Program-made: the position numbers and the translations under genes
The notes under the pieces: generated by a model
What the model saw: the letters and a program-made list of their open reading frames with translations, nothing else
Databases searched by the model: none
Told to the model about the DNA's origin: nothing
Assembly (NCBI GenBank): GCA_964106645.2
Contig: OZ067051.1
Reading direction: 5' to 3' (one strand)
DNA: 64,000 nucleotides
Source: Podarcis pityusensis
Taxonomy: Eukaryota
In this document: piece by piece, positions 29,625-63,363 of the stretch
Position numbering within the stretch: the first letter of the stretch is position 1
Layout: each line of letters opens with the position of its first letter

Positions 29625-32600
29625 TTATCGGGAAGAGTTGGAACTGGATCGGCTGCGATGACGCCTGCGGCCTGGAGATCTGGATCGTGACCGTCTGCGA
29701 ACTGGGGATCTGCGCCTGGGAGACCTGGACCTGAAAGGGAATATAGTTGCAAGGAAGAGAGTTGAGCTTCAGTTAGGAAAATGGATGGTAATGGAAAGTA
29801 ATCCACACTTATATAGTCCCTTTTTATTCAACAGCATTCAAGAGTAGTTCTTACATCCTAAAGGGTGAAGGCAGTTCAACATGCTAACATTTTGTAAATG
29901 CAGAAAGCAATATAGCAACTGTATAATAACTAAATAAATATTTTCTCAGTTCCTAGATCACAGTGTTTTATTTTTGCAAATACACGTCATCAGCTTATAT
30001 TAACAATAAAAATATTCCATCAATCTCGACTTAAACAGATAAGGCATATACGGTATGTTCAAACTTAGAATGAGTTGTGAGATTTTAGACACATGCCCCA
30101 TGAGTACTTGAGAAGGGTCTATAGGGCAGAGAATGTTGGAACCATTATGGCGCAAGTACTTCCACCTGCCTTCTTCCCCTAATGTATTTCTTAATGTATT
30201 TTTAAAAATAAAATTGCTGGATTTATTATTGTACATTTGGTATGCTGTGAGTCACTTTGAGCACTGTTGTGGAAAAATGGCATACAAACAAACTGACGCT
30301 AATGCTCTGGAAGGGGGCGCCTATCCTTCAATTACTTTGTGTAGGGACAGTCTTTGTTCGCCATCAGCTGTAGTGCAGGAAGTAAGTCACTGCCCATCCT
30401 TGGTGTGACTCATCTGAGACCGCAGGTGTCTTCTTTTTAGTTTGCCTCCCTGGACAGAGCTCCTACCAGCTGTGAACAGCTAAGCCCCTCCGGCTTACCC
30501 AGCTCCACAAAGGCAACCTACCTTCTCCTCATGCGAGGTGGAGAACGACGCCACATGGGCGGTGGCGGCAACATCCTCCGTGGAGGGGAGAAACGCCTGA
30601 GAGGCATCCTGGGCCGAGGAGTCAGGACAGCCGTGGCAGTGATCTCCTGACCATCAATCTGCCCTATTTAAAGATCACAGAAGCAGAAAGTTGATTTGTT
30701 TCAGCAGGGTGAGGGATTGACGCAAAGGCTCCCTGTAGCCACTGCCTTCTTGCTCACTAGGGAAGGTCAAACTATGGCAATGGTGGGGGGGAGCAGGGAA
30801 CCTAGAGAGAGATATTAATACACAAGTAAAACATACATGCAGGGAGATACCAAAAAGACATTGGGGAACCACAAACACCACTTTGCTTACCTATTACGAT
30901 CAGGCCCAGTTCCCTGACTGATTCCCTCTGTGCGTCATTAGCCCCTCCCAAGAAAAAAAGAGATTTGTAACCTCTGACCTACACTATAAATTCTTAAATG
31001 TCCAACATGGGACTGCAAGTTTTTCCTGGGACAAGCCTCTGCTTTCTTTAGGAATAATTGCTGCCAACTTATTCCAAGGTCTTTGCTCATGCCCACAGGT
31101 CCACTGCCTTTCTGGAGAATGCAGTTTACCTTGGGGGCCATTTTCATCAGGATGATCCACCCTTCTCACTTTGGGCCTGAAACCAACATGATGTGGTTGC
31201 AGAGGTCCCACCAGCCCATATTCCTGGCAGACAAGGTTGATTTTTTAAAAAAGAATTCATACAGGTAAAATGATATATTTGTATTATTATAAGAGTAAAA
31301 CTTGAAGAACGAAGAGCCTTATTTTGTTCAGGTGTGCTCTGCAAAGAGCCCTCCTAGCTGGTAGAACCTATATCACTTTTGGGAAATCTGAAACCCTTGC
31401 TTTAATGGCGTGATCATCTCAAATTACAGATTTTTCAGTTATGTAGGAGTCACACCTCTTAACAATGCAGCCAGATTCTGAAACCCACCTCCATCCATGT
31501 GCTTCAGTGCCTTCTCAGCATCATCTGGATTCTCAAATTCTACATATGCATAACCCTTTGAGAGGTGTGGGTTGAGTCTGTCGACTGGCATATCAATCAT
31601 TTTGATCTTTCCATAAGTGGAAAATATTTCCATTATGTGGTCCTGGAAGAGGAAAAGCAAGCTCCTTAACGCTCATGGCAAATGTTCATTACCTTCCATC
31701 TTCATAACAACAAAACACTGAATGGGCAGCGGCGGAAGCAGCGGCGGAAGCAGCAGCAGCAGCAACACCCACCCACCCACCTTTAACTGGATTTGAACAA
31801 AAAGAGTGAAGACCATTCAATTACATATTGAAACGCTTCAACAGTTTTGCTTCCCAGGTTACCTGAACTTAACTCAGCTATATCTATAGGAGAATAAGAA
31901 GAGCCTGCTGGACCAAGCCAGTGGCCCATCTAGTCCAGCACACTGTTCTCACAGGGGTCAAGGCTCTCGCAAGCAGGGCCTGAGCACAACAGCACTCTCC
32001 CCTATAGAGATCTAGTGTATCAATACTGGGAGGGACCCTTGGTCAACAGCATTCCCAGCATTCATATTCAATATGGACTTACAGGAAGCTGTCTTATACT
32101 GAGTCAGACCATTGGTTCTGGGGGACTTTTGTTTCCCTACCCTCTTTGGCCTTTTTACTTCTTTCTGGGTATGAGTGAACAACAGGCATCTGTTACCTTC
32201 GTCACATTTCTGGTGAGTCTCCCAACATGTACTTTGGTAGGTTTGGGTGATGGACTCCTTCTCTTCCGTTCCTTTTCATCTCTCTTAGGCGGTTTAGACC
32301 TTGTGGAAATAAACAAAAAGTGTCAAACAAAAATTTAAACGTATGGATCTGCAACTCAAGCTCTTCATTAACTCCTATCATGCAGCATGACAAAAAAAAC
32401 CACCAATGATCTTATTCTGTATTCCTTGCTAAATTTGTTTTTTTTAAAAAGTGGCTGGTGCAACAACTACAGGCCATTTATAGTTTGCAAGAAATAATTA
32501 TGCTAAAAGTGAGTAACTATTGAGGTTTAACTTAAATTCAGTAGGGCTTGGAGGGACCTTTACTTGATACTATCCACCAAGTTTGAAATTTAGAAGCATC

Positions 32601-34372
32601 CTTTTCATAAAACACAGGTTCCCAAAGATGAGATTCAAAAGGCAAAGAACTGGCCAATCTGCTATTTTACCCACTTCTGCCTCTGGCCCACTGCTAGCAT
32701 GTGCCCCTCCCCAAGAAAGAAACATGGGCTTTGAGCTGAAAAGTGTTCCCCACCCTTGTCTTACAGGAAGCACGTATCAAGGCCAATGGAAATAAAATAG
32801 CCAGTAGCCTCCAGTAATCTAGACTCACTTTGAACGGGAACGCCTCCTGTTGTCATGCCGATGTCGAGATGGGCTTGGAGAACCCGATGAGCTGCTGGAG
32901 CTGGAACTGCGGGATGTGCTTGAACTCCCAGAGCGGCTTGACGCGGAGGAGGAGCTGGAGCCACTGCTGGAGCCGGTGCTGGAGCTAGAACCAGAACTGG
33001 ATGTGGAACTGGAGCGAGACCTGGCAGAGAAGGTGTCATGCAAGAGACTAATGGCAACAAGGGTGTTCTCCCGATAACCCCCAAGAACTTTTGAAGGTGT
33101 TGGAAAGAACACACCATTGTCTTTTGCAGTTCCAACCCAAACCTGGCCACCTCCCAATGCAGAGGTGATGCTCTTTCTAAATCATTTCACTTATTGTACA
33201 AATGGTCCTTTGTCAAAAAACAGATTTCAGAGCAATATACAAAAGTCACCTCAAATTACAAATACCTTATAAAACCAATTTCATGAAGAATGAGAAAAAC
33301 ATTCAAACCACTAAAAATGCCACCATCTAAAATGCTCAGGCAAAGGAAAATCTTTTAACAGTCTCTGAAATTACCTCCCTTTGGAGGGTGTTCCACAGCT
33401 GAAGTGCCCATAACACACACACCCCTTTGTAAATGCAGGACACACATCTTCTAAAGATGAACACCAAGAAGGGCCTCCCCTCCAAACAGATCATTAGGGT
33501 GCAAACGACCTCCTGTGCGAAACCACACACAAACCCCCAATATCTCAATCAGAGAAGAGGACCTGAAGTCAAGTATGTGTTTAGCATTACTGCTTCACTC
33601 AACTTACAACCGACCTGCTGGTTCACATCAAGGGGCATATTTTAAGTTCTCAAGCTTAACTGCCCTACATTCCTGGGAATCTCACAAGTAGGGCATGGTG
33701 AGACAGCCACCACAACTCCATCCCTGTATCCAACATCTGAAGAGTTAAAAGGTTTCCTCTGTCTGAGCATGGCGGCATCATTTTTTAACTGCCGATTAAG
33801 AATCCTTGGGAAGGCCTGGTCCTTGAAACGGCCTTCAGAAACCCAAGAATTCCTGACTCTGCTTACCTGGTGCTGCTACTACCACTGGAGGCGCTGCGCC
33901 TCTTGCGAGTTTTGTCACGCCCACGATCCTTTTCGCTTGACTCCTTTGTAGCTGGCTTGTCTTTGGACCTGTCCTTGGACTTTTCTTCTGTACGGTCCTT
34001 GCGCTTGGTAGGAGAGGGAGCCCTTTAATGAACAAGGTTCAGAAACTTAATTTCCAATCCCGCAATTTCAGTTGCAACAAAAGCAAGAAATGTCACTGCT
34101 ACAAAGATGCTAAGAGACAAATCCCCAGTGTTTACACTATGGAGCGGCTTCATGAAAGAAAGCCAATGGTGTGGAATATATGGAGATTATGAAAAGGAGG
34201 GAAGATGCATTTCTAATTCCTCATGCTTGATGGGAAATCCCTAGGAGTCTGCACAGATCCCCCAAGAGGGGTGAGGCCTTGAACATTCAGACAATTATTA
34301 CCTAGTGCTGGACTTTTTATTATTTTCTTTGATTCCTAGCAAACTCTTCTTTTTCATTCCTGACAGCTCCAT
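29625..34372 (-). CDS. RNPS1: RNA-binding protein with serine-rich domain 1 (EJC/ASAP component), complete CDS, 7 coding exons, 307 aa
   Basis: Exons: 34302-34372, 33867-34022, 32829-33020, 32197-32299, 31489-31642, 30522-30663, 29625-29730 (924 nt, GT-AG). The protein has MELSGMKKKSLLG..., a Ser-rich tract, the RRM (DHIMEIFSTYGKIKMIDMP...KGYAYVEFENPDDAEKALKHMDGGQIDGQEIT) and an RS/P tail ending SSSNSSR*. Confidence 0.97.
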
Positions 34373-35435
34373 TTTCCCCTTCCGAGTCCAAAAGCGGCAC
34401 TTTTTTGGGGGGGCTCACTTATCTGAAAGCTTACTTCTAACTCCTTGATTCTGAGAAACGATCCCTAAGCGAATGCAATAAACTCCAAAGAGCAGCCTAG
34501 TGACAAGATAAAAGGGATATGAGACAGTTAACATATAGGCAGAGGAAAAGAAAACCCACTTCACAAGAAAAGGCACAAGCTTCATGCAAAGCATTATAGT
34601 TCACACACTTCTGTGTGGCTTGTTATTACCCATTTGAAAATAGCATCTGCTGAATAACTTAAGAGTGTGTTTACACAGAGCATTTGAATTTTCTTTCTAA
34701 TCACCCTTCAAAAGGAGGAAGAACACACAGCAAAGCACACAGAGTTTTTCAGTCTGAATTTCTTAGTACTTTTCCTTAAGATATGCAGCATTACAACAGG
34801 ACAGTGGTAGCCAACATGGTGCCCTCCGTGTGAATTGAACTCCAACTCCCATCAGCCTGTCATCACAGCCAACTCTCATGGATGATTGGAGTTACAGTTT
34901 GGCAACATCTGGAGAACGCCACGTCGGCTACCTCTGCAATAGAAAGCAAGGTACCTCAACAGGACATTGTGGTACAGTAGTAGCAAGAAAGCATTTTAAG
35001 TCCCAGGAAAACTATAGTAGATTTTAATTGTTTATAAGAATTTCTACTGCTCTTCCTAAATTCTTAATGCAGTTTCTCATTACTACTGCTAAGCTTTATC
35101 TTGTATTGATACAGAGTGCTGCAGTTAAGTCTGCAATTTCAGCTCCATGGTCACTCCCAGAGACTATTAAATGTAACAGAGCAGAAGCAAAGCACAGCGC
35201 AAAACCCTATCCTCAGATCACACAACGGGGTGGTAAAACCTGTGGTCTTCCAGATGTTCTTGGACTCCAACTCCCATCAGCCCCAGCCAGAATAGCCAAT
35301 GGTCGGGGTGATGGGAGTTGGCAAACCAACAAAATTAGGAGGGCCACCATTTCCCATCTGTGGTATAAAAGAACCTCAGTTGGAAATGCTGCTGGCTATT
35401 CCAGATAAGCTACAGCAAGTCCTTATGGGTTACAC

Positions 35436-35759
35436 CAGGGGTCAGCAACCTTTTTCAGCCGTGGGCCGGTCCACTGTCCCTCAGACCATGTGGCGGGCCG
35501 GACTATATTTTTTGGGGGGGAGGGAATGAACGAATTCCTATGCCTCACAAGTAACCCAGAGATGCATTTTAAATAAAAGCATGCATTCTACTCATGTAAA
35601 AACACCAGGCAGGCCCCACAAATAACCCAGAGATGCATTTTAAATAAAAGGACACATTCTACTGACGTAGAAACACACTGATTCCTGGACCATCCGTGGG
35701 CCGGATTGAGAAGGCGATGGGTCGCATCCAGCCCACGTGCCTTAGATTGCCTTCTCCTG
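35436..35759. mobile_element. hAT-type non-autonomous element in RNPS1 intron 1
   Basis: CAGGGGTCAGCAACC...TCCTG termini, perfect 8-bp TSD GGTTACAC, internal tandem duplication. Confidence 0.8.
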
Positions 35760-37649
35760 GGTTACACACATTGTGGGCTCAAGAGTGTCTCTGTAGTCTG
35801 AGAGTAGCTATGGCTTATTTCAAGTACTTTAATTCTACCCCTCAGTATAGAACCCAAGGTGTTTTAAAGTCATACATTAAAAACAATGACTATTTTAGAA
35901 TGGTAGAGTACAGGGTACTGTACATTTCAGATTAAGTGTATGTATTTTTCTCTAGCAAACCAGCATCACAGCAATCTACGGGAAATGGGTGGAAACTCTG
36001 AAAACAAAGGTTTTCATCCTTGTAGTTCAATTCCTGTACACTGCTATGCTCAAGTAAGTCAACAGGCACTGAGAGAGCAAGGTTGCTTTGATGTACATTT
36101 GACGTACGAAGGACAAATATGTTTTATCATCGTTAAGATTAACACTTGGAACTATTACTTTATGGAGGGCAGCCTGGATTAAAATTAAAGATGCATTTTC
36201 ATGTGCTGAGACTTCTCTCAGGCACATTATACACACAAACTGTGTATAATGTGCTTATGCAAATAACCCTTTGGGAAGGTCCAAAGTAAGCTCCAACAGG
36301 CCATTATTCTACTGGTGTCTGTAACTTAAATTGCAAGTGCCTGAAGCAGTTCAAACATAAGGGAAAGCACATACTGTTATACCACTCTGCTTCTGCTATA
36401 GCAGAAGACTATTCCCACAAGCTTAGCTTTTCACTTGAAGCTCTGGTTAAGTATTTCTGCACGAGTCATTCAAGAAGGCAGCTCTTGCTTTTGTGGGATT
36501 AAAGGTATTATTCCTCTATATCCACACTTCATGACCCACTCTCTAAGTGGTACAAAAACAATTTGAAAGAACCTGTTCAGGTTAAATGAGGTCTTGAATT
36601 AACTTGGTGGTTAAGAGAAATCAGTGAACCCTCAGTAAAAGAGAACTGTCTGCTGTATATCACATCCTCAGTGCTTTAAGACCAGGAACACCAAGCCCAA
36701 GCTTACCAGTACTGCCCAAAAAGTAAAGAAAGAAATATTGTGTACAAACTTCAATAGTGCCTAGAGGTCTTTCTGTGGGAATCACTGACTTTGCAAACTG
36801 ACTCTTATCAGCATGTTCACAAAGCTAGCAGAATGGCTACCTGTATACCTTACTGTGTTTGGGCAATACAGTACATTTACTTCACTGTGGTGAAAAGCCA
36901 CTTGGTACATAATCAAGTGAATGCTTTTAGTCTTAGTGTTTTAAACATATCAGTGGACTTGCATATTTGTCTAAGTAATCACTGATATTATTGAAAGGCA
37001 ATTTCTTTGCTATTGATAAAGAAATATTAAGTGAATTATAATAGCACCTGCCACACTACTGCTCTTCACTACCACCATCCCAAGAAGACCCTCTAAGACC
37101 AAGACCACCCTCTAAGACCAAGAGGGACCAGAGATTTGAACCTGAGCTTCCCAGGTACAAGCTATATCCTGTACTAGCTCTGCAAGCTGGCTGAATGGAC
37201 AACAGGTTACATCTAAAAGTAAGAATCGTACAACCACAGTGCTGCAACATAAAGCCATATCTGAGAATCCACTGAATGAATCCCCATGCTGGAAGCCAAG
37301 GTTTAAGAGGTAACCAATGGGGCCAGTGTGGTGCAACACTTAGCATTACAGAAGCAAGAGGGTTAAATCCCTGGTCAGTCACAAAGCTCAACGGAGTGGC
37401 CTTGGCCAGTCTGAGGGATCACAACAGGCCTATCTCACAGGGCTGTTATGAGGTTAAAACGGGGGTAAGGGAGAGAGGAACCATAAACTCCATCCTGTAT
37501 TTCCTTGGATAAGGGATTGTCTTTTCCAACATCAAATAGATAACACGATCGATATAATAATAGAAGGACGCAACTTGAATGTGCACAGTACTGGTCAGGC
37601 AATTAAGGGGGCTTGAAGGAGACTTTCAGAGTGGGCTCCAGGAAGTTTG

Positions 37650-38210
37650 GGAGACCCCTCAAGGGGGGGGGCGGGGAGGGAAGAGAAACGAACCCCCTCC
37701 TCAACTGGGCCTAGCTGGCGAGACGAGCTTTCCTCGCCCGACACGGAGAAAGAGGGAAACGGGAAGGGGCGGAGCAAATCGGCTCTGCCGCTTCAGTCAA
37801 CCGACCCCACACAGCGCCTCTAAGGGCTCCCAAACTCTCCCCTCCAGCCAAGGCCTCCGCGCTCCTCGAGCTCCTCCGCGGGGCCGACCTCCCTCACAGA
37901 CCCACCCCCAGCGTCCGGGAACCTTTTCTTGCCACACTCGGGCGTAGTCACGGTTAACTGCAACCGGACCGGGGCAGATGGCGGCGGATTACCGCCTCTC
38001 CCCTCTACTTACATCCTCAGAGCCCGACCGTCGCTCCCTCGTCGCGCTCGCGGTGACGTACGGATTGCCGCCTTCCACACAGCGGCAAAGAGCAGCTAGG
38101 TGGCGCGCGCTGATAGCGTCACCGAAAGAAAGGAAGCGCGGAGAGGAGAGGCGGGGTAGCCATTTATCTCCATGGTTACTGGCCCCACTTAAAGGGGCAG
38201 ATCGACCCTT
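37650..38210 (-). promoter_or_regulatory. RNPS1 CpG island, promoter and exon 1 (donor GTAAGT after 38013)
   Basis: CpG-dense region. CRE-like TGACGT/GCGTCA (about 38054 and 38116), YY1-like AGATGGCGGC (37976-37985), GC box at about 37766, and a consensus 5' splice site GAT|GTAAGT. Confidence 0.8.
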
Positions 38211-41432: not shown

Positions 41433-44196
41433 ATGTCTGGGTAGACTGCCTAAACAAACAAACAAACAAACAAACATTAGCAAACGTTTATCCTACATAA
41501 ACCTTGAAGGAAGGCGGCTCTTCTCCTGCAAGGGTTAAGCTGCTTCTCCCCTTGACCCCTTTCCCTGAAAGGGTTACAGAGGAGCTGCTCCTCCATCTAA
41601 AGTACACAAACCTTGTTCCCAGCAGGCTTTGCGAAGTTTGGCTTTCCCCCAATCAAACAAAGAAGGCTGGAGCTTTTCGAACAGCTGCTGCAGCCTCGTC
41701 AGCAGCCCCGGGACTGTGCAAAGTTGGGGAGAAACCGAAGCACTTGGGGTTAGAGAGGTGCAAAAAGAGCATTTGAGTTGGCGGAGCGGCGTTTCTCCTC
41801 TTAGCAGCGCGATCCTTTATGAAGCAGCCGGAACAGTTTTGAACAGAAGGAGGCTATGAAGATTGCAACTTTACACCAATTTAGAGAATGAGATCTGCGT
41901 GGGAGTAACATATGGTTAAGCGTGCAGAGTATAGCTTTGCACACCTGGCTGGCGTGGAGATCGCCTCTTCGGTCAAGATTTGGTAAAGGGCGCTTTGTAT
42001 TTTGGCAGGTTTGTCTCATTGCTCTCGTGGTTTGTTATTAAATTGTGCAAAAATCGCGGGAAGGTTTTTTGTTGTTGTTGTTTTGTCCATCACCAAACAA
42101 ACTAAAAGGAACCCCCGGGTAATACTTTTGGTGTCAATGCTAATGTTAGCAACAAACATCTACAAAGGAGCGAGGAAGTTTCCTCCGAATTAATCAAAAC
42201 CTTTTAGGCTATAATTCTCTTGTCTGCTTACCTGATGTAAGCCCCATTGAACTCGACGGGTTTTACTTTTGACTGGGAATGCATAAGATTGTGCAGTTAA
42301 CTCTTCTTAGTTTACAATCCCAAGTAATAAAAGAGAGCTCTCTTGGAAAGATTCAAACTTGAATGTCGGGGTATAAATAGAAACAGAAATAACAATGAAA
42401 AATTTTCACCTGGCTGGAAAATAAAGCACACACACATTCAGTCTTACTTATGTAACTTGCATGCCAGCTGCAGTAGAAAACAGAATACATACATTATTAT
42501 TTTTTGGCATCTGTCTGTCCCAAAAGACAATGGAGTGCACCTGCTGGGGTGACGCCAAACCACTGCCACTAAGCGCAAGCCTGGGCAGTGTGTAAATGTA
42601 ATCCTAGGTACGTCTACTCAGAAGTATCTCCCTCTGAGTTAAATGGTACCTTCTTCCAGGTTAGACATGTTTAAGGATTTCAGCCTAAAACCCTAACAAC
42701 CTCTTCCTGCCCACTCTTTATTTATTTTGCTTCACATTCGGCTTGGTGAGGAGCTCTGATGAACTCAAAATATTTTGTGCACCTCATTGTGACCTTTTAG
42801 TTAGGCTTGATTATTAAAATATAGGAAGATATACAGATTATACAGTTCCTTCAACAGATTTTTCTTAGCTTTCAAGGTAAATAATGCAGCAGAACCTGTA
42901 ATCCCTGATGATTATGTACCCTCAGGCAAGAAGGCAGTTTAGGAGAAATAGGATTGTGGGTTATACTCCTAACAAATGACAGCTTCAGGGATTCTAAGTG
43001 TACCTTCTTATATGTTGTATAACTGTTTAATAAGTGTTGCCTAACAGTAAAATCTTCTGTTTTCTTAGTGTAGTATCTTAACTGCTGTGTTTAACAAGCC
43101 AACCCACTGCAGTTAATAAAGGAATATTATGTCTCCTGGTAACATTCCACTAGCTAGGCAACGGTTTGAACATTATAAGGGCTTTAGCTGCTTGTTCATC
43201 CTAATCTAGGGTGTAAAGGAAAATAGAAAAAAAGCTGCCATTAATAATACATTTAAACATCAATACATTCATCTTAGTTTGTACATATAGATCAATATGT
43301 GCCATCCAGATGTCCTAATATGTCTTCAAATGAAGTTGGTGTTCATAGAAAGTGCACTCAAATGTTGCAAGGACTTTAAGGTCATCAGACCACCGCACAG
43401 TAGATGGTGCATATTTATTGTTCCAGGCTTTTAGTGACCATTAGGACATGTAAAATCTATTATTGTTGTTCTGCCATTAAGCAGCATACAATAGAAATAT
43501 AATTTAAAAGTACATGAACATCTGCAAATTTCTAGGATTTTGCCAGTGCAAAATTGATAAGGATAACATCTTTGGACCAAAAAGAAAATATCACCGGACA
43601 TGCCCACAGGGTTAGGGTTTTAACTGCTATCAAAAATTGATAGTCTACTTTCCCTGGGCTGGAGACATTTATTACATTTGGATAATGAAACATATCTATT
43701 GTTAGTGCTTATTACAGGAGAAAATGGTATTGGCCTTTGTAGATTTTAGTCTACCTAAAATAACACAGTAACCAGTTCCTTGGCCCAGGTGGAAGCTTCC
43801 AGGCAACTGTGAACCCCTAGACTTCTCTCTCAACCCTTAAACCTTCATTGAAAAGGGAAAACTGCTGTACCTCCTCTAAATTGTAAGTCAAAGAGCTCAG
43901 ATGGTATTTTGCTTTCTTTCCTTGGGATAACCAGATTGTCTTTAGGTTAAAGCTTCTTTGAAAGGTTGTAATGACATATAATTAGGTGGCCTCTGATCCT
44001 GTGGAAATACTCCCACTGTCGTGAATCTGTTCAAAAGAGATCCTTGCAACATCACAATTCACTTCTAGGGCAAATAACCCATGAATTCTGTACAATGTGT
44101 ACTGTTTGAAATGTGTCTGTACAGGCCTGGCTTTTGGCCTACAAAAGTGCATCGTTGCTGTGGCATCATCTGTAAAAAAAACCTTCGGCTCACTAG

Positions 44197-44231
<35 letters not shown>

Positions 44232-45933
44232 CCTTGAATTTCAAAACATTCTCTAACTTTGAAAGCTTGTTGTGGCAACATGAGTAACAATTCACACATT
44301 TCCTTGAATGTCCTCCTAACAGGGCAGAGAACCATAGAGGCAAAGCTTAGTTTCTGAAGACTCTACATAGACAAAATGCTCTAGAAATGGTGTGTAGGAT
44401 GTTATTAAGCAATGAGGGAAATGTGACCCTCCAGGCCTCTCTATGTGGCCCCATATACCTTCCTCTGGCCATGCCACTCACCAACCCTACTTCATTCCTA
44501 GCTGTCTTGGAGTGTTTTGGGTTGTTTGGGCTGGAATGTGTCCATAAGCTCTGATACTGCTTCTTGTTGGGTGGATGAAAAATAGAGGAGGGCTGGCTGT
44601 AAAAACTAGTCTACTCTGCAGAGGTAAAATCTGCATTCATTGCTCTGCCCGCTTCTGAAGCCCCTGCCCAGATGGAAATGAGGCCCTTAGTTTAAGAAAA
44701 GTCCCTTCCCCCGTCCCCCGAACTGGGGTGTCAAGATCTGGGACAGAGCATGCCTCTGTTCCACTTGGTGGTCAACCTTGCTTGATTTTACTTTGCTGCC
44801 ATCTGAGCCCCCAGGCCCTGCTACAGTAAACAATTCACAGCACTTTTGATAAGTGCACAGCTGCTTATCCTGTAATATTGTCACTTTAACTTGCTTTGTC
44901 CTTGGAATTTGTTTAAGTGCTGTGGGGCTGGCTAACAGTGTGGCCCTCCAGAGGCATTTATTTATTTAGCAGCATTTATATTCACTTAGTTTGCAATAAA
45001 ATCCCTAAGTACTTTCCATAAAATGGTATAAAATAGCAACGAAAACAGCAGACATAATAAAATGACCAAATTATCGTTAAAATCAACAGATGTTAGAAAC
45101 AAATGTACGCAATAAGACCAGTGTCACTGCGCTCCCAACTCCTATCGGCTTCACCAGCATGGCCAACAGCTGGGAGTTGTGATCCAACACCACCTGGAAG
45201 GCCACAGGGTAGCTATCCTGGTTTGTGTGATCATAGGGGAAACCTGAAGTTAGGAAGCTACCTAATTCTCAGCCAGATGGTCCATCTAGGTGTTCAGAAG
45301 CAGCCACCAGATAGAGCCCTATTCTCTCTTTCCCTCTCCCTCTCTCCTTCTTGTCTTAATGAGAACAATTTTATTCTATCCTTGTTTGTTTGTTTTCTCT
45401 TCCAGCCCAAAGTTCTGCTTAAGAAACAGAAAACTGCAAGAAATCAGAGAGGGATTTTCCCAGCGTGGCTTCTCTTCTTGTGTGGGCATTGAGTGGACAG
45501 GGTTAGACTGATGCTGTTAACTCCCGCCCAAGCGTTACTGGAGTCTTCCTTTGCTACAGAAAAAGGATATATATTTTTTAACTTCCTGCCCATCTTCTGA
45601 AGGGGAGATATAAATCCAAAAATACACAAGTGTTTGTTCCATGGAAAAGGCCATTGGCCAGCTCAGGAGCTGGTGATCTTTGCTGGATTTCAGAATGGAT
45701 TTAACCTTTGCAGTGGCTTTCTATAGGATGGTGCAACAGTGATCGTGACCTTGGAAGGAACACTGGTTGTTTCCCCAGCACCATTTTGCCTGTTTGACTT
45801 GCTAATCTAGCAGCATCCACATCAGGGTCTCTGTTGGCTGTTAATGTACCCTACCTTGAAAACGGCGTATTCTTCTGGAATGTAGCCACTGTCCATTTGA
45901 CTAAAGGAAGAGGCCAAAGTCCTTGGCCCCGCC

Positions 45934-48900
45934 ATGGGTCGCTTAGATGACCATGCCAAGAAACGGATTGTGGAGCTGCGCAAAGCCGGCTTGAGTTTCC
46001 GCAAGATCAAAAAGGTGCTGGAGCTGGACAACATCCGGGTCACCCCACAAGCCATCTACCTGTTCCTTAAGCGGAAGAACGTGGAGCCCAGCCAGCCCCC
46101 ACCTGTCTCTTTTCTGCAACCTGCTCTTGAGAATGGAAGCAGGAAGACTCTTGTGGACCAAGCTGGCTGGGAGGACAACCAGCTCTGGAAGTTACTGCAG
46201 GAAAACGAGACTGAGCACCATGGGCAGAGAGAGGCTGCTGGCTCTGTGGCAGGAGTTGGCCCAAGCTATGAGGTGCCGCCTTGTAACGGCCATTGTGATG
46301 GCGAGGAGCACATCAAAATAATTAGCGTGACTTCCTTGAGCAAGGATGGAGGGCCGTTTGAGAAGCAGAGTGCCTCCCATGAGGGCATCTCCAGCGGATC
46401 TCAGCTGGGCCAGAATATGGGTAAAGCTTTGCACAGCCTCTTTGTTCACATGTGCTGCTGGCTTCTGCTTGAGGCCTGTTTAAGAAAACTCCCACAACCT
46501 TTGCTCACAGCAACCACCCTCTGCAAGTGCAGGCTGTCAGGGGTCCACTTTCTATGGGTTTCTGGGCTGGAGGGTGAGTGACGGTTTAGTAGCACTTCTA
46601 AGGGGTAATAGCTTCTAGTTTAGTTCTGAGTGCCATGTGACCTATGAAGCCCTTAATGACCAGGGCTTAAGGCAGCAATGGGGTAACACCAAACCCATGG
46701 GCCTAATTCGTCCTGGCACATTGTCCCAATTTGGCCCATGAGGCTGTTCCTCAGAAACTGCTCCCACTTGCCCCACACTTGTCATATGTGAACATTTGTG
46801 TGGGGCAGGCACAGACTTTGCTGCAAATTTCTTTGCTAGTGGGGCTTCCTGTCAGTGCCTATTGGCTAATCAGCACTGATGGAGAGTTCAAAGGCGATTG
46901 ACAGCACTAAGGAACACATTAAAAATAAATGAATCAATTAACAATTATGGGAAGATGCATTCTTAATTGTCTGCATAGGCTTGGAGGAAGATAAGAGTTT
47001 TCAGGTGTTTAAAGGTTGAAACAGAAGGCAGCTGCCAATTCTCCACGGACAGAGTATTCCATAGCACTGGACTGACAATAACAGTCTGTTTTGTGTTGAT
47101 GTCAAATGAGCCTCACCAACTTGGGAGACAGCCATCAACACACCTGCAGATGATCTCAGTGATCAATCTAATGGTTCAGGCCGTCCCTAAGGTACCCTGG
47201 ACCTAAGTTGTTCAGGGCTTTGTAAATCAATACAAGGGCCCTAATCCTGGCTTGGCAGCAGATGAGCAGCCAGTGCAGATGTTTAGCAATGGTATCACAC
47301 GTTCCTGGCCATGTGTCCCCATCAGCACATCTGGGAGGCACCATATTGGTTTGCTACCCTGCTTTTCTCTGTTGGGATGACCCTGAGGCACCTCCACTTC
47401 TTTCTCTTCTTCACTTCCAGGTGACAACTGCCCAGGGCCAAAACCACCTGTGTCGCCCAGCTGCTTGACTCCATTTGCACCTGCAGTTCCTCAGCATAAT
47501 CTGAATGGCAAAGGGAAGGCCTTTCTGCCACCTGCCCGGAATCCTGCCTTGATTGTGAAGAGGAAGATCGTAGGCCGGGCCATCCATCTCCAGAAAAAGG
47601 TGGGAAGGGCACAGAGAGGGTGAGAGAGAGAGAGACAGAAATGAGCATGATTGGAAGCCCAGAATAGAATCCCAAGTTAGCCCTATTATTCTTGAGTAGT
47701 TTCATGCAACCCCTAGAATCAGTAGAAAGGATGGGTCTGGTGTCCTTCAGTGGGGTATGAGAGCTGATTCCCCCCCCCCCCCCCAAACATGTAGGAACCA
47801 ATGCGACCCTTTGGATTCAGATAGCGCATGGGTAGACCAGTCTGAAAAGCCCGGGACACAAATTTTCATGGCCCTCTAGTGGCTATGGTGGCTCATTTAC
47901 CAGAAATACCAGTAATGTAGGTAGCTGTGTTGGTTTGATGCAGTCGAAGTGTGCATGCACATGAAAGCTTATACCCAGAACAAACTTAGTTGGTCTCTAA
48001 AGTGCTACTGAACAATTTTTAATTTTTATTTATTTATTCAGAAATAATGTACAACTCTGGAAGTTGTATCCTCGATTCTGACCAGACCAAGCCTCCTAGA
48101 GCAAAATAAAAGAGGGTGGATGCAGGATGGAGAGAAGTGCTGCATGAGTGTCAAACCTCTGCATTGTATCTAGCCAAGTGTTACTCAGAGTAGACATATT
48201 GAAAGTGACTGGAGATGACCCTCTTGCCTTTTGCGTGGCTGGGATGTAGCTCGCTCCCAGAAGGGAATGTGGCCCTTGAACTGAATGAAAGGTTCCCCAC
48301 CTGCACTTTTTTCATCTTCTGGAAGTACAGCTCTTAAGCAGAAACTGAGTCTTCTCCCTTGTCCGTTAGGCAAATGTACAGAACGGGCAGAATTCATCTG
48401 GTTCTACACCCAGTTTGCCTTTCACGGTGAGGGTGCAGCCAACTGGCCATCCTTCCAGGGGGACAACTCCTGTCCCGATGGCATCTTCTGGCTGCTCTGC
48501 ACATGTAAGTGATGTAGAGTGTGCGTGCTTTAATAGCGATATATGTCAGAAAGCGTAAAGGCTCCCAAGCAAAAGGAGGTTGATTGTTTTTTGGGGGAGG
48601 CGGGGGGTGGGAGTTGAAGGATTGTGTGCATTGAGGTGGTAAGAGAGTCTGTAAAAACTTCAGAACCCAGTTGGGGAAGAGTTAGGGCAGGGGGCCACTG
48701 ACCTTTTGGGAAATGCTTGGAATTTTGAGAAAGTGCCATGGGCACCAGTCACAAAATGGCTGGCGTGAGGGCAAGGGGGTAATTGCCACATCATCTTAAA
48801 GGGAAGAGACAGAGACAGGGCCACAAAATGGTGTGGGCGTGCTCTCCCTCTCCCCTTGCAACAATGGGGGGGGGGAGGCAGCTACATCAGCCACCACCAT

Positions 48901-49876
48901 GCTCACTCGCAGAGAGAAGCTCTTTGCACGTCTCCTCTGAACAGAGGGTAAAATGCCAACCCAGTGAAATATTGACATGTTTTAAGGGGGCGTGTTCAAA
49001 GTAGGAGAAGCTGAGACGGTGCAAACAGGAATTGAGGAGGAAGAGCAAACAATCCCTGGTGTTTGGTGGATTTTAGAGGGGATATTTATGAAGACCTGCT
49101 GCAAACGCCAGAGGAGGCATCCTGGCACTTGTGATGTTTGTGACTCCTGAACTAGAGTCTTTAATTGAAGAAGAGAATAACTATTTGGTGATCCTACCGT
49201 GTTATGTACTGAAGTTCTCACCCTGGGCCAGCAGGGGGATACTGTAGATAGTTATGCAAATGAAGGATCGAAAGTGACATTCAGTGATTGGATAGTTTTA
49301 GAAAATTGTTACAGTAATGTGGTACTGGAGCTCTATATAAGCAGGCTGACTGAGCCCTTCAGTTCAGTTCTGTCCTGGCCTGTGAATAAACAAGAGCTGT
49401 TTGAAGAATCGCTGTGTCGTCTGATATGTTCACCCACAACTTAACACGCCATTTCTTCTTCTTTTTTGGATTCCCCCTCCCCTTTCTAGACTAAAGATGC
49501 CGGTACTCAGACTTGTACATTTAACCCCACCTACCCTCCAGTTCATCAGAATCCTCAGTGGGGAGCTCAGATGACTACCTCCTTGGTCCCTGCTGCCAAC
49601 CCTCAGCCGCTTGCAGAGAAACTGGATACAGTGCACACTGAGGTCCAGAAGCTTGCGCAGGCTGTGCATATGGTGCTGGAGCGCCAGTGCCGACTGGAGC
49701 GCCAACAGGAGCAGCAGCAGCGCTTCCAACAGGAGCTTCTCATGACGCTGCAGCAGCTCAGCTCCACTGTTGGCCACGGGGCGGTCCCTGCCCATGCCCC
49801 CTGTACTCCTTACAACGTGGCTGACCCCTCGCCACCCTTGCCAAGCTTCAGCCAGTTCAAGATGGAGCTTATCTGA
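45934..49876 (+). CDS. Uncharacterised 395-aa protein: N-terminal Tc1/paired-like HTH, low-complexity linker, TQT motif, C-terminal Gln-rich coiled coil
   Basis: Strong Kozak context (CCGCCATGG). Exons 45934-46420, 47421-47599, 48370-48504 and 49490-49876 have polypyrimidine-AG acceptors and GT donors, with phases 1/0/0 giving an open 1188-nt CDS. AATAAA at 50766 is followed by a GU-rich tract. Confidence 0.8.
46905..47300 (-). mobile_element. Old LINE (L2-like) 3' fragment
   Basis: Degenerate sequence resembling fragments at about 54720-55050 and 19745-20200, with (ATTT)-like tails. Confidence 0.4.
47920..48020 (+). mobile_element. Penelope-like element remnant (same family as 22400)
   Basis: GTGTGCATGCACATGAAAGCTTATACCCAGAACAAACTTAGTTGGTCTCTAAAGTGCTACTG is the reverse complement of the 22400 copy. 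Confidence 0.6.
49200..49446 (+). mobile_element. Solo LTR (about 247 bp)
   Basis: TGTTA...TAACA termini, octamer ATGCAAAT (49254), ATTGG (49287), TATATAA (49334) and AATAAA (49385) in LTR order. No clean TSD. Confidence 0.65.
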
Positions 49877-49936
49877 CCAAGGACTACGGGGATGGCAGTG
49901 GAGGTAATGAGTGAGCTGTTTTATGTTCTAAGTGTA

Positions 49937-50459
49937 CTGTATTTTTCGCTCTATAGGACGCACCAGACGATAAGACGCACCTAAGACGCAAGAAAAAAAA
50001 ATTCTGAATCCCAGAAGCCAGAACAGCAAGAGAGATCTGGCTTCTGGGATAGCCTCTTGCTGTTCTGGCTTCTGGGATAGCCACTGAAGCCTCTCCCGGG
50101 CAGCGGGATGAAGGCTCCCCCTGCCTGGAAGAGGCTGTGCGCAGGTAAGCTGCCCTCTGTACCTTCCCCCATCTCCCGCAAGAACCGCACGCTCTTTAAA
50201 GGGAGTGCGGTTCTTGGGGGCTTTTCTGGGAGGTGGGGGAAGGGACAGAGCCCCCCACTTCCCAGAAGAGCTCCCGCTGCCCTCCGGAGGCTTCACAGGC
50301 TGCCCCAGAAGCCAGAACAGCGAGGCGGAGCGCTGCGCAGCACTCCGTCTCGCTGTTCTGGCTTCTGGGGCAGCCCGTGAAGCCTCCGGAGGGCAGCACA
50401 CACATTTTCCCTTACTTTTTAGGAGGGAAAAAGTGCGTCTTATAGAGCGAAAAATACGG
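49937..50459. mobile_element. Tc2/pogo-like MITE in the 3' UTR of the HTH gene
   Basis: TIRs of about 27 bp, C(T/C)GTATTTTTCGCTCTATA(G/A)GACGCAC, with TA TSD and internal inverted repeats (CCCAGAAGCCAGAACAGC). Confidence 0.85.
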
Positions 50460-50765
50460 TATGTCTTTCGCACCTGGCTCCGGTTAGTAGATCTGCAGGT
50501 TCTAGGAAAACACACACACTAAATCCTGCAAGTCAAACTCGTATGGCAGGGGCTGTTGCAAAGTAAATGGGGTCAGAACATCCTTTGCATACCTGGTGCC
50601 CTCCAGGTGTTTAGGACTACAGTCACAGCCAGCATAGGGCAGCATGCTGGCAAAGGCTGGGTGTGAGCTGTGTCCCAGTTCTTTGTGGGATACCTTGCAC
50701 AGGATTGGTTGGGGAGTACCTTGTCCCTTATGACCTGTATCAAGGCCCTGTGCAACCACGTTCAG

Positions 50766-50771
50766 AATAAA
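50766..50771 (+). terminator. Poly(A) signal of the HTH/coiled-coil gene
   Basis: AATAAA followed by GU/U-rich sequence; a second AATAAA lies near 50855. Confidence 0.55.
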
Positions 50772-51875
50772 ATGGTCTATTTACACACGTGTGCCTTGTT
50801 TTCATAATTTGTTCTTTTCTTAAATTACTATTTTTAAATATAAACTTCACATCGCAATAAATTAAATATATCAAAAAGTGAAGACGGATTACAATGAGTG
50901 TTAAATTAATGTGGCTAGATTAGATATTTTCCCATGTTGGTTTTTGTTTTTTAAAAAATTACCATTGCAGAAAATACATGAGGATTTTGCTACAAGTTGT
51001 AGAACAGTGTTTATAAGTTTGGATCAAAACATACATAAAATGATAGTGTTCATAATTGTTATACAGAGAGGTTTTATTTTTGCACAGTTCAGATATGTAA
51101 ATACATCTGTTTTGGTTTAATTGCACCTCCAGCAATGTGTGTTTGGATTGTCATCACATTTCTGACTTCTGTTTTTAACCAGATTTTTCTTGAGAAGCCG
51201 TTCTGTACTTACCTGCGTTCTTGGAAACACAACAGGAACCTCACTTTCCCCTCGCTCTTGTCAATATACTGTGCCCTTAAGCAAAAAGGCACATGTTTTT
51301 GTCTAAGGCTTCTTCACCTTAATAAAACAGCACAAAGAAACTTAAGACAGGTTTTTACTGCCCAAAGCCAAATACCACTGCATCGTAGGGGTGTAGTAAA
51401 ATGCCACAAAACAAATCCACATGTGTCAAAAGGGCATGTAAAGCTGCAGTCTTATACACAATTAACCTGAGCACAATATCTATGGGGTACCACATAACAC
51501 TACCTCTGCCCTAAATGGGAGCCTATGCAGTTGGGCTATCTCTGGTACCATGGTACTAATAACACTGGTACATTCTATTTACCCCCCTCCCCAAGCTTCT
51601 GTAGGGACAACACAAATAATAAAGAGCAGTGCTTGCTCTTTGCAGTATGCATGATGCCCAAGCATGTGGAAGAGGGTGCCACTGGGACCCTGGCACCCAA
51701 ACAACCCCCTCCCCTGGCAAAATTATTATGGGAAGAAGTGTCCTTTTGTAGCCCATAGACTGGTTGTGTAAACTTGGTTGTTGTGCCCACAACAATGGTT
51801 TTTGTGGTTTGTAAATGCGCCTGTAGGTCCAAAAATGTGGCCATCACAGTACAGAAAGGCTTATCAGTGAAGTTA

Positions 51876-52199
51876 AAAGGTAAAGGGACCCCTGACCACT
51901 AGGTCCAGTCGTGGCCGACTCTAGGGTTGTGGCGCTCCTCTCGCTTTATTGGCCAAGGGAACCGGCATACAGCTTCCGGGTCATGTGGCCAGCATGACTA
52001 AGCCGCTTCTGGCAAACCAGAGCAGCGCACGGAAATGCCGTTTACCTTCCCGCCAAAGCAGTACCTATTTATCGACTTGCACTTTGACGTGCTTTTGAAC
52101 TGCAATGGGAGCTCACCCCGTTGCAGGGATTTGAACCACCGACCTTCTGATTGGCAAGTCCTAGGCTTTGTGGTTTAACCCACAGCGCCACCCGCGTCC
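51876..52199 (-). mobile_element. Sauria-type SINE, near full length
   Basis: Characteristic body and (ACCTTT) tail; 13-bp TSD ATCAGTGAAGTTA at 51863-51875 and 52200-52212. Confidence 0.85.
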
Positions 52200-53315
52200 A
52201 TCAGTGAAGTTAGTTGTTACTGAACCAGCAGAATGTTTCTGCAGCATAATAAACACCAGGTGCTGTAGTGGTGACCAGCAGAGGGCAGTAGCTGATCAAA
52301 ACACAGGACCCTCACTCTCTCAAGTCCCATGTGCGAATACAAGCACCATATAAAATCTTCAAGATAGAAACAAACAAACAAACAAACAAACAGGAAAACA
52401 CTGGTGCAAACTAGTGGCTCAAAAGAGGCCTATACAAAGCAGGGAATTACGGCGGTAAAGAAAAGGGATGGAGGAGACATGCATTTGGTGCCAAGTGTCG
52501 CAACTCTTCTTTGGTTTGCTTCTAGGGGAGAATGAAATGTTGCAACAGATAAACCCTTTCCTAAGGGTTTTTTGCCTCTGACTCAGCCATGGGAAGCTGC
52601 CTATCAAGACCGATCATTAGGTCATCTAGCTCACTACTGTCTACACTGGCGGGCAGTGACTCGCCAAGATTTCAGGCAGGGGTCTCGCCCAGCCCTAACT
52701 GGAGATGCCAGGGATTGAAACTGGGACGTTCTGCATGCTAAGATGTGCTCTACCCACAGCCCTTGCCACATACGAAATCAAACTCTCTGCCCATCTAGCC
52801 AAGTACTTTCTACTTTTGACTGGCAGCAGCCCTCCAGGTTCTTGGCAGATGCCTTTCACAGCACCTGATCTTTGGTCCTTTTAAACAGAAGATGCCATTG
52901 GTTCTAGCGCCACCTACTGTTGGCCCTCCCTACCTTCTGCCCTACCAGTCCCAATGGGGACCAGCCACCGCTGGAAGAGAATTATAACCCTGCGTACACA
53001 AAACAAAGCAAAATCAAGGTTTTGCACTATGAAAATCTGCAAAACACTCCCCTCCACACCAGATACACAAGAGCAGTGGGGAGATAAAGCAGAAAATGAC
53101 CTGGAAACACAAGTTTCATGCATCTCCCAGTAAGGATGGGAAGTAAACATACAACAACAATAAATAAACCCAGGGCTTTCAAACATCCAATGTTACATTC
53201 TTGGTCCATGTGTGCAATTGCTGGACAACCAGCACAGCTGCTTTTCAGAGGTTTTTGCTGCTTCTCATCAGTTACAGAAATAGCTTTTTCCTGGTGAAGG
53301 CTGTTCCCAGGAGAG

Positions 53316-62300: not shown

Positions 62301-63363
62301 TAACAAACTACAGTTCCCAGGATTCTCTGGAAGGAAGCCATGGCTGCTAAAGTGGTACAATGCTGCCTTAAATATATAGCGCAGATGGGCCCAATGTCTC
62401 TCACACAGCAGGGGAGTTCGTTAATAACATTACCCAGCAGGGTGAATGGTATGGAGCTTTCTGTGCAATCCACACTTCCTGTGCAATTCACATGCGCTCC
62501 TCTACAGCCCGAGATTGCAACCTGGTAAATCAGCTGCCAAGGTTTTGGGCTGCGTGTGATAAAGGGGCCCATTAAGCTTTTCAATTTGTGGAAGCTGAGC
62601 AGAAAAAGGTTATCTGTGTGTCAACTATGGATAGGGTAGAAATTCAATTTTTGTTTGCATTTTATTGACAAGCCATCTAATTTGCACTTCTCAAATCAAG
62701 ATGCAAACCAAAACACACTTGTCTTCCGAAACCCACACTTCTCCAATTTTTGCAAAATACTCTTGTAAAGTGTGGACAGTTTTCAGCAACTTAGGGGAAA
62801 GCATGCATAAAAATGACTATAGTAGTGAAAACATACAAAAATGAATTATGGGAAACTGATTAGGGGGAAAATGTACATTAGTTAAAATTGCATTGAATAA
62901 TGTGCTTATTAGCAGGTATCTTCACTAAAACGTGGCTGAATTAAAATTTGCAGATTGCTTCAGAAATGTGGAGAAATGAATTTAAGATTGGGGAAAAAAT
63001 GAGATAGCGACAGAAACTTGGACTGACAAATTCATCCATCCCTAGGGTCAATGTCATACCGTGAGGCTTGATAGTCTTGGACTGTCCTTCTGGCAAGATG
63101 AGGAACAAACCATTGCTTCCAAATGTGCCCTGCAGATCAATAGTGCTGTATGGTATGGCACTGTGCCCGGAAAAGAACATCAACGTGTACCCTTTCAAGC
63201 TGACACCAGGATGCCCTTTCAGCTCTATAAATCGGTACAGAATGGTGTGGTTGGCCATGCCCAGTTCATTGATTACGACTGAGTGGTTCTGGGGCAGTTC
63301 CTCTGTGGAATTTGAGCCAGGAGGTGGGCAAGTATTTTCCTGGGAAGGAGTCATTTCTGTCAC
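53316..63363 (-). CDS. Uncharacterised type I membrane glycoprotein with lamin-tail-domain-like extracellular module; 3' part only (367 aa), 5' end outside the window
   Basis: Exons 63060-63363, 61270-61471, 59827-59957, 59187-59297, 57348-57545, 56633-56726 and 53316-53379 join in frame (1104 nt). Motifs: VVINEL...FIELKG...LKGYTLMFF, SLSRC...PTP..EN.C, a Cys cluster CFCGICQCYL, the TM helix WEIALIVVGSIFLVLLLAGTAFYCI, and the tail KRRPQNYTTIELNDRCEFMADF*. Confidence 0.8.
53898..54068 (+). mobile_element. tRNA-headed SINE
   Basis: A box TAGCTCAATGG and B box GGTTCAATCCC, followed by a body shared with copies at about 21810, 26290, 52620 and 61680. Confidence 0.7.
57701..57942. mobile_element. 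Tigger-like MITE (family A)
   Basis: TIR CAGTGGTACC with TA TSDs at 57699-57700 and 57943-57944. Confidence 0.85.
60100..60462 (-). mobile_element. Degenerate CR1 3' fragment
   Basis: Aligns by eye to the 3' end of the CR1 at 16414 (GTCCAACCCCCTGC, GGTGCCCAGAACTGGACACA). Confidence 0.65.
60890..61107. mobile_element. Tigger-like MITE (family A, opposite orientation)
   Basis: TIR CAGTGGTAC and TA TSD; the internal sequence is the reverse complement of the 20278 and 57701 copies. Confidence 0.8.
61807..62043. mobile_element. TcMar-type MITE nested in a tRNA-derived SINE
   Basis: Termini CAGTCAAA...TTTGACTG with TA TSD; SINE sequence resumes on both sides. Confidence 0.75.
62071..62392. mobile_element. 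Long palindromic MITE-like element
   Basis: Imperfect inverted arms (CATCTGC.../...GCAGATG; ACTGTAGTTTGTTAAG/CTTAACAAACTACAGT). A half copy lies at about 58575-58680. Confidence 0.6.

What the first reader, a model, noticed from the sequence alone, without database searches (positions are those of the whole stretch)
45934..49876. Unnamed spliced gene that looks like a domesticated transposase DNA-binding domain turned transcription regulator
Seen: four exons join into an intact 395-aa ORF with a strong Kozak context and a poly(A) signal. Residues 1-50 (MGRLDDHAKKRIVELRKAGLSFRKIKKVLELDNIRVTPQAIYLFLKRK) follow the pattern of the N-terminal paired-like HTH of Tc1/mariner transposases (L....R..IV.L...G.S...I...L......T...I). 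There is no DDE catalytic domain and no flanking TIRs. The gene has introns and ends in a Gln-rich coiled coil (LAEKLDTVHTEVQKLAQAVHMVLERQCRLERQQEQQQRFQQELLMTLQQL). Inference: a host-fixed dimeric DNA-binding protein, possibly binding TcMar TIRs such as the many MITEs in this window. I do not recognise a named mammalian orthologue, so it may be a non-mammalian vertebrate gene.
Basis: partly seen in the sequence, partly recalled or inferred. Interest (0 to 1): 0.85.

Follow-up and report, generated by a model that had tools for sequence, protein, structure and literature searches.

The report
Ancient transposase-derived silencing factor of vertebrates
This lizard gene, unnamed but kept from fish to marsupials and apparently lost in placental mammals, took its DNA-gripping first 48 residues from a jumping-gene enzyme and carries a short motif that matches a known docking site for a gene-silencing complex.

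Summary
Confirmed: four GT-AG coding exons give 395 aa; spliced contigs from four studies support them; RefSeq predicts the same, uncharacterized, protein in lacertids. The gene seems single-copy in lizards, turtles, alligator, birds, marsupials, monotremes, amphibians, lungfish, coelacanth and ray-finned fish, head-to-head with RNPS1 in lizard, tinamou and shad; no eutherian or shark protein was found. Residues 1-48 (dN/dS 0.01-0.12) fold as a three-helix HTH and align without gaps from Met1 to the first (PAI) helix-turn-helix of invertebrate-type Tc1-like DD34E transposases, including ones retrieved by their catalytic domain alone. Linker, second HTH, DDE and TIRs are absent. New here: a motif I-[IV]-S-V-T-S-L, invariant at the three critical positions from shad to lizard, matches the validated ATF7IP-binding motif of MGA (IVNVTSL). 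A coiled coil, a terminal SUMO consensus and, in tetrapods, an LC8 TQT motif (also noted by this scan, s1-711445) complete it. Best reading: a dimeric DNA-binding adaptor that recruits ATF7IP-SETDB1 for H3K9me3 silencing; no binding is shown. Binding to young lizard MITEs is unlikely. I found no paper on the gene.

The parts
41616..41981 (+). probable promoter and non-coding first exon (inferred)
   Evidence: 41616-41684 is 77% identical to the tinamou locus upstream of the orthologue; donor-like site at 41982; RNA contigs carry 363-394 nt upstream of 45403 that lie outside 45000-50950. The joint itself was not seen.
45406..46420 (+). first coding exon (5' UTR part 45406-45933 with six upstream ATGs; CDS from 45934)
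45934..46077 (+). residues 1-48: three-helix HTH, homologous to the first (PAI) HTH of Tc1-like DD34E transposases
46165..46203 (+). short conserved amphipathic helix with near-invariant W79, partner unknown
46312..46338 (+). FAM-like motif IKIISVTSL (I129, V132, L135 = the three critical positions of the MGA motif)
47421..47599 (+). coding exon 2; 47537-47599 encodes a conserved basic helix (possible nuclear localisation or second contact surface)
48370..48504 (+). coding exon 3, in-frame 45-aa cassette, disordered; missing from many annotated isoforms
49490..49876 (+). coding part of the last exon
49490..49513 (+). LC8/DYNLL-type motif TKDAGTQT, tetrapods only
49610..49765 (+). long helix with heptad pattern (coiled coil), residues about 306-362
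49856..49873 (+). terminal FKMELI with a SUMO consensus (hydrophobic-K-x-E), kept as IKVE or similar in fish
49935..50461 (.). 527-bp MITE with 29-bp terminal inverted repeats and TA ends, inside the 3' UTR; unrelated passenger
50766..50771 (+). poly(A) signal where RNA contigs end
31487..38014 (-). part of the RNPS1 gene, conserved head-to-head neighbour (its lower end not mapped)
   Evidence: upper end from note s1-711358 and the CpG-rich stretch

Best explanation
A domesticated gene born in or before the ancestor of bony vertebrates, when the 5' end of a Tc1-like DD34E transposase gene (start codon plus first HTH only) was fixed beside RNPS1 and joined to host-type sequence. SHOWN: intact, spliced, conserved, syntenic gene; HTH homology to these transposases; loss of linker, second HTH, DDE and TIRs; conservation of short motifs in a disordered body. 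INFERRED: (1) the HTH still reads DNA by sequence; (2) one PAI-type HTH binds weakly, so the coiled coil, stiffened in tetrapods by LC8 on the TQT motif, makes a dimer that reads two half-sites; (3) the I-x-S-V-T-S-L motif docks on the fibronectin-III domain of ATF7IP and brings SETDB1, as in MGA and ZMYM2, laying H3K9me3; (4) SUMO on the terminal lysine reinforces this. It would thus be a KRAB/KAP1-independent repressor of a small, conserved set of host loci, lost in placental mammals and decaying in some birds. Step odds: real gene 0.99, transposase origin 0.8, sequence-specific DNA binding 0.75, ATF7IP docking 0.65.
For: Splicing. Range and single family. Synteny. Selection. Fold. Origin: in 1.84 billion proteins the only non-family sequences that match positions 1-45/47 are four short proteins (E 1e-5 to 4e-4), two traced to broken DD34E elements; 23 full-length transposases fetched by the catalytic domain alone align ungapped from Met1, up to 19/48 identical, top score 31 bits against 12 for the best of 4600 shuffles, and their profile scores exon 1 at 31.8 bits. 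Motif: MGA FAM is IVNVTSLAA, killed by changing I1, V4, L7 (PMC12303078; PMC7706265); the family consensus IVSVTSL matches 6 of 7, those three positions are invariant in 19 species from shad to lizard, three members have IVNVTSL exactly, and 20 of 20000 shuffles match as well as the lizard.
Against: No binding, localisation or chromatin data exist. The homology covers 48 residues of a common fold; structural Z scores (6.2-6.8) do not separate transposases from other HTH proteins; Pfam HTH_SB stays below its cut-off; the tree has too few columns to show direction. The motif was spotted first and tested afterwards, also resembles a SUMO-interacting motif, and has drifted or gone in many Neoaves and some frogs. 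The TQT motif is missing in fish, lungfish and coelacanth. Tissue of expression is unknown.
Confidence: 0.5

Rival explanations
1. Transposase-derived DNA-binding dimer as above, but the central motif is a SUMO-interacting motif or binds another partner, so the output is not ATF7IP-SETDB1 silencing (it could activate or scaffold).
For: The motif is a run of I/V next to acidic residues, and the protein ends in a SUMO consensus; other conserved helices (W79, basic helix) have no assigned partner; the body is Gln/Pro-rich.
Against: The invariant positions include S134 and L135, which fit the FAM pattern and are not needed in a plain SUMO-interacting core (own knowledge).
Confidence: 0.22
2. The HTH is kept as a protein-contact or non-specific chromatin module, not a sequence reader; the protein is an adaptor.
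For: The PAI subdomain of Sleeping Beauty also mediates oligomerisation (PMC7827188); the AT-hook linker and second HTH are gone; 85-90% identity from frog to lizard on all faces suggests protein contacts too.
Against: [quoted passage not shown]
Confidence: 0.12
3. The HTH came from an older host HTH protein or by convergence, not directly from a transposase.
For: Short domain, common fold, moderate E-values; no vertebrate copy of the donor family was found.
Against: No host family (PAX, pipsqueak, CENP-B, Myb/SANT) scores on the lizard domain; the match starts at Met1 and shares the longer helix2-helix3 turn without gaps.
Confidence: 0.1
4. One reading: it binds TIRs of the Tc1/mariner-type MITEs now present in lizard genomes and polices them.
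For: KRAB-transposase fusions act on cognate TIRs (bioRxiv 10.1101/2020.05.07.082677); a silencing motif would suit; a MITE sits in its own 3' UTR.
Against: HTH dN/dS 0.01-0.12 and near-identical recognition helix over all bony vertebrates, which do not share these MITEs (inference); the 3' UTR MITE differs even among the lacertid runs.
Confidence: 0.05
5. A plain transposon relic or a gene-prediction artefact.
For: All database names are automatic ('uncharacterized').
Against: Spliced contigs, synteny to fish, purifying selection, no TIRs, no second copy in the window.
Confidence: 0.01

Closest known systems
Tc1-like DD34E transposases of marine invertebrate-type contigs (P0171, P0177, P0180, P0344, P0359, P0362)
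   Same: First 46-48 residues align without gaps from Met1, 30-40% identical; same three helices.
   Different: The gene lacks the basic linker, second HTH, DDE domain and element ends; it is spliced, fixed and under purifying selection.
PAX paired domain; Sleeping Beauty and Tc3 PAI subdomain
   Same: PAI-type HTH; weak matches to 6urs, 2m8e, 6pax and Z 6.2-6.4 to Tc3.
   Different: Only one of the two HTH units; no PF00292 match for the lizard domain; longer turn before the recognition helix.
SETMAR, and pogo-derived CENPB, JRK, JRKL, TIGD, POGK, POGZ (PMC7386202)
   Same: Host genes domesticated from IS630-Tc1-mariner transposases.
   Different: Those come from mariner or pogo and keep both HTH units, mostly the DDE fold too (own knowledge); this comes from a Tc1-type DD34E lineage and keeps 48 residues. 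That paper names only SETMAR and CENPB as earlier Tc1/mariner cases.
Host-transposase fusion genes such as KRABINER (bioRxiv 10.1101/2020.05.07.082677)
   Same: Transposase DNA-binding part joined to a repression module in a spliced gene.
   Different: No KRAB, SET or SCAN domain; the effector is a short linear motif. The survey needed a Pfam transposase domain, which this gene does not reach; its locus ids are not in the supplements held.
FAM-bearing ATF7IP partners MGA, ZMYM2, ZMYM4, ZNF518A, MBD1 (PMC7706265, PMC12303078)
   Same: Same motif in a disordered region of a DNA- or chromatin-binding protein.
   Different: Small protein with one HTH and a coiled coil; binding not shown; absent from the mouse and human systems where those partners were found.
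LC8 clients such as Panoramix and ASCIZ (PMC7861614, PMC10046861)
   Same: TQT-anchored motif in disorder near a coiled coil, in a nuclear regulator.
   Different: One motif only, and only in tetrapods.

Membership tests
Tc1/mariner transposon | DDE/DDD catalytic domain | tested here: not met
Tc1/mariner transposon | terminal inverted repeats around the ORF | tested here: not met
   (44000-52000; only the 3' UTR MITE has TIRs)
Tc1/mariner transposon | bipartite DNA-binding domain with basic linker | tested here: not met
   similarity ends at residue 46-48
Tc1/mariner transposon | dispersed copies | tested here: not met
   one locus in the window; one locus id per named species; whole genomes not scanned
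Domesticated transposase gene | homology to a transposase | tested here: met
Domesticated transposase gene | orthologous fixed locus across species | tested here: met
Domesticated transposase gene | purifying selection | tested here: met
   (synonymous sites near saturation, so values are rough)
Domesticated transposase gene | transcribed and spliced | tested here: met
Domesticated transposase gene | a shown cellular function | not testable with these tools
   no paper found
Host-transposase fusion genes (Cosby et al. criteria) | recognised Pfam transposase domain | tested here: not met
   HTH_SB 21.5 bits, cut-off 43
Host-transposase fusion genes (Cosby et al. criteria) | two or more exons with RNA support | tested here: met
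Host-transposase fusion genes (Cosby et al. criteria) | fused host-derived domain | tested here: inconclusive
   only motifs and a coiled coil; no donor gene found
PAX / paired-domain factors | paired domain PF00292 with PAI and RED | tested here: not met
FAM-bearing ATF7IP partners | I/V-x-x-V-x-S-L motif with critical I, V, L | tested here: met
FAM-bearing ATF7IP partners | motif-dependent binding to the FNIII domain | not testable with these tools
   needs pull-down or co-IP
LC8 clients | TQT-anchored eight-residue motif in disorder | tested here: met
   (LC8Pred not run)
LC8 clients | LC8 binding and induced dimerisation | not testable with these tools
   needs ITC or co-IP
Myb/SANT-coiled-coil factors from Harbinger (MSANTD, NAIF1) | Myb/SANT or MADF domain | tested here: not met
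   no such Pfam match; only the layout is alike (own knowledge)

The most novel reading that the evidence does not exclude
An undescribed sequence-specific arm of the ATF7IP-SETDB1 heterochromatin pathway, as old as bony vertebrates, built from a single Tc1-type HTH plus linear motifs. It silences a fixed set of loci in fish, amphibians, reptiles, monotremes and marsupials, and was discarded in placentals and some birds. It would be the oldest clear Tc1-type domestication in vertebrates and would help explain how lineages with few KRAB zinc fingers aim SETDB1.
Probability: 0.35. Interest if true: 0.8.

Novelty: new variant of a known kind. Interest (0 to 1): 0.62.

Why it matters
Catalogues of transposase-derived vertebrate genes rest on Pfam hits and on human and mouse, so a gene below Pfam cut-offs and missing from placentals falls through both. 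It adds a Tc1-type (DD34E) domestication to a list dominated by pogo and mariner, shows that one HTH can be enough to keep, and offers a direct test in zebrafish-type fish, frogs or opossum cells of a DNA-binding recruiter of ATF7IP-SETDB1 that needs no KRAB or KAP1. Its apparent loss in placentals is a candidate regulatory difference between them and other vertebrates.

Tried and rejected
Searches were run exon by exon by reference; the joined window model was not searched or folded; the database protein P0198 stood in for the full-length fold. PDB sequence search with the lizard HTH alone: nothing; with the profile only weak hits, the best an EF-hand-like stretch of CFAP115 that I reject as partial and repetitive. 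Foldseek: no match at E <= 0.001. ESM Atlas features: all under 0.82. A mixed alignment meant to pull full-length transposases returned orthologues only. Metagenome scan with the transposase N-termini: nothing. No complete TIR pair was found for the donor-type elements; only a shared left boundary at TA with different flanks. Multi-repeat HTH proteins P0156-P0186 match only short stretches and score low on the transposase profile. The 48-column tree groups the host domain with P0171/P0180 but cannot give direction. Locus look-ups failed for Zootoca X2, coelacanth and bichir. Paper searches by locus ids, neighbours and concepts found no description. Automatic names such as 'collagen-like', 'IF-2-like', 'polyhomeotic-like', 'veA', 'MED15-like' are low-complexity mislabels. 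No human sequence was fetched or compared.
Full report
Observation. The four coding exons lie at 45934-46420, 47421-47599, 48370-48504 and 49490-49876. All introns are GT..AG, phases fit, and the sum is 395 codons plus a stop. Exon by exon they match the RefSeq model of Zootoca vivipara (P0198, 395 aa) at 91-97%; Podarcis and Lacerta have the same 395-aa model, so the window is a lacertid lizard. Contigs from four studies show joints 1 and 3, and one contig runs through all four exons. These runs differ from the window by about 3%, so they are a related species, and contigs show presence, not level. They also show that the first coding exon begins at about 45406 and that 363-394 nt come from further upstream. 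A stretch at 41616-41684 conserved in tinamou, with a donor-like site at 41982, is the likely first exon (inference).

Range. Residues 1-60 find orthologues in lizards, turtles, birds, marsupials, monotremes, caecilians and frogs; further calls add alligator, geckos, newt, lungfish, coelacanth, bichir, paddlefish and many teleosts. Every name is 'uncharacterized' or an automatic mislabel. No placental, shark or snake name appeared, and all unnamed hits are nearest to non-placental groups. Only the best 120 of 240 and 493 hits were listed, so absence is likely but not proven. RNPS1 lies head-to-head in lizard, tinamou and shad; the downstream membrane-protein gene is shared with tinamou; in opossum and platypus an ABCA-type transporter of ABCA3 size lies tail-to-tail. 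From memory, unchecked: in human and mouse RNPS1 and ABCA3 are neighbours with only non-coding genes between them, which fits loss in placentals. Nei-Gojobori dN/dS is 0.012 (lizard-tinamou), 0.04 (lizard-platypus) and 0.12 (lizard-shad) for residues 1-48, and 0.21-0.28 for the rest; synonymous sites are near saturation.

The N-terminal domain. AlphaFold2 gives helices 6-17, 22-31 and 38-48 at mean pLDDT 86. Structural neighbours are HTH proteins, with Tc3 transposase at Z 6.2-6.4 tied with GcrA and ArgR; in the Atlas nearly all neighbours are transposases or integrases. Fold alone does not decide origin. Sequence says more. In 1.84 billion proteins, the only sequences outside the family that match positions 1 to 45-47 are four short proteins. 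Two were traced to broken elements in low-GC eukaryote-like contigs from metagenome assemblies, followed by HTH_Tnp_Tc3_2 or DDE_3, with D-83-D-34-E spacing. To avoid circularity I searched with the catalytic part alone. The 23 full-length transposases recovered align to the lizard protein from Met1 without gaps, up to 19 of 48 identical; the host profile scores them up to 31 bits against 12 for the best of 4600 shuffles, and their own profile scores exon 1 at 31.8 bits, E 0.005 at whole-library size. Pfam HTH_SB gives 21.5 bits on residues 8-33 only. The similarity stops where the transposases begin their basic linker. So the gene kept the start codon and the first (PAI) HTH and nothing more. 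In Sleeping Beauty this subdomain dominates base-specific binding and also oligomerises (PMC7827188). Direction, transposon to host, is inferred from the narrower range of the host gene; the tree cannot show it. The host animals of these elements were not identified.

The rest of the protein. The model of P0198 is disordered except for helices 80-91, 204-226 and 306-362. Across 19 bony vertebrates the kept blocks are W79, I127-L135, a basic helix around A216, the heptads of the long helix and a terminal hydrophobic-K-x-E. The block I-[IV]-S-V-T-S-L matches the ATF7IP FNIII-interacting motif (FAM) defined in PMC7706265. The validated MGA motif is IVNVTSLAA; changing I, V and L at positions 1, 4 and 7 abolishes binding, and tethered MGA raises H3K9me3 through it (PMC12303078). 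Those three positions are I129, V132 and L135, all invariant. Of 209 family proteins, 93 read IVSVTSL and three IVNVTSL; 20 of 20000 shuffles match as well as the lizard. The test is after the fact, and the motif drifts to VASL or is lost in many Neoaves. The TQT motif (VKDASTQT most often) fits the LC8 anchor described in PMC7861614 and is limited to tetrapods. The terminal K-x-E is a SUMO consensus (own knowledge).

Mechanism. Most likely a small dimeric repressor: coiled coil and LC8 pair two HTH heads, the heads read two half-sites, the FAM motif brings ATF7IP-SETDB1, and SUMO adds avidity. Gene structure, homology and motif conservation are shown; every binding step is inferred. I give the whole chain 0.5. 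The near-frozen recognition helix argues for conserved host targets, perhaps relics of the founding element's ends, and against young lizard MITEs. The main rival is the same protein with another output partner.

Novelty. Domesticated transposases and FAM-bearing recruiters are known kinds. I found no paper on this gene or its locus ids, and its ids are not in the held supplements of the host-transposase fusion survey, whose criteria need a Pfam domain. A review of pogo domestication lists only SETMAR and CENPB as earlier Tc1/mariner cases. The library misses most subscription journals. The combination (one Tc1-type HTH, linear silencing motif, bony-vertebrate age, placental loss) makes it a new variant of a known kind. 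Interest 0.62.

Noticed in passing
L003:4597-5061, L007:1890-2903, L011:5143-6012: Three DD34E elements only about 67% alike each carry a tail-to-tail ORF with a BEN domain or its likeness: possibly a two-gene Tc1-like transposon, like Harbinger with its Myb gene.
   Followed up: partly
L012:1633-3211 (also L013, L014): A broken bird copy with introns kept and the same downstream neighbour: stops after residue 56 and in the last exon, damaged HTH. Seen on 15 contigs; species not known, perhaps chicken or a relative. Looks like an independent loss.
   Followed up: partly
P0127, P0132 and many Neoaves proteins: The FAM-like motif decays in many birds and parrots have changes in the HTH, suggesting relaxed selection.
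   Followed up: partly
window 49935-50461: TA-flanked MITE with 29-bp TIRs and long internal hairpins (50276-50397, 95% complementary) in the 3' UTR; would form double-stranded RNA.
   Followed up: partly
window 45406-45933: Six upstream ATGs in the 5' UTR part of the first coding exon, ORFs of 1-29 codons; possible translational damping.
   Followed up: no
window 53298-63372, minus strand: Unnamed multi-exon membrane-protein gene, syntenic in tinamou, no Pfam match for the exon tested; in opossum and platypus an ABCA gene lies next to the HTH gene instead.
   Followed up: partly
window 16430-18173: CR1-like LINE reverse-transcriptase fragments (ORFs 16487-17062 and 17574-18173, minus strand).
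   Followed up: no
window 48370-48504: Exon 3 is an in-frame cassette just before the TQT motif, absent from many annotated isoforms; it would change the spacing between basic helix and dimer module.
   Followed up: no
searches hit lists: No snake or Anolis name among the listed hits although many other squamates are there; possible further loss.
   Followed up: no
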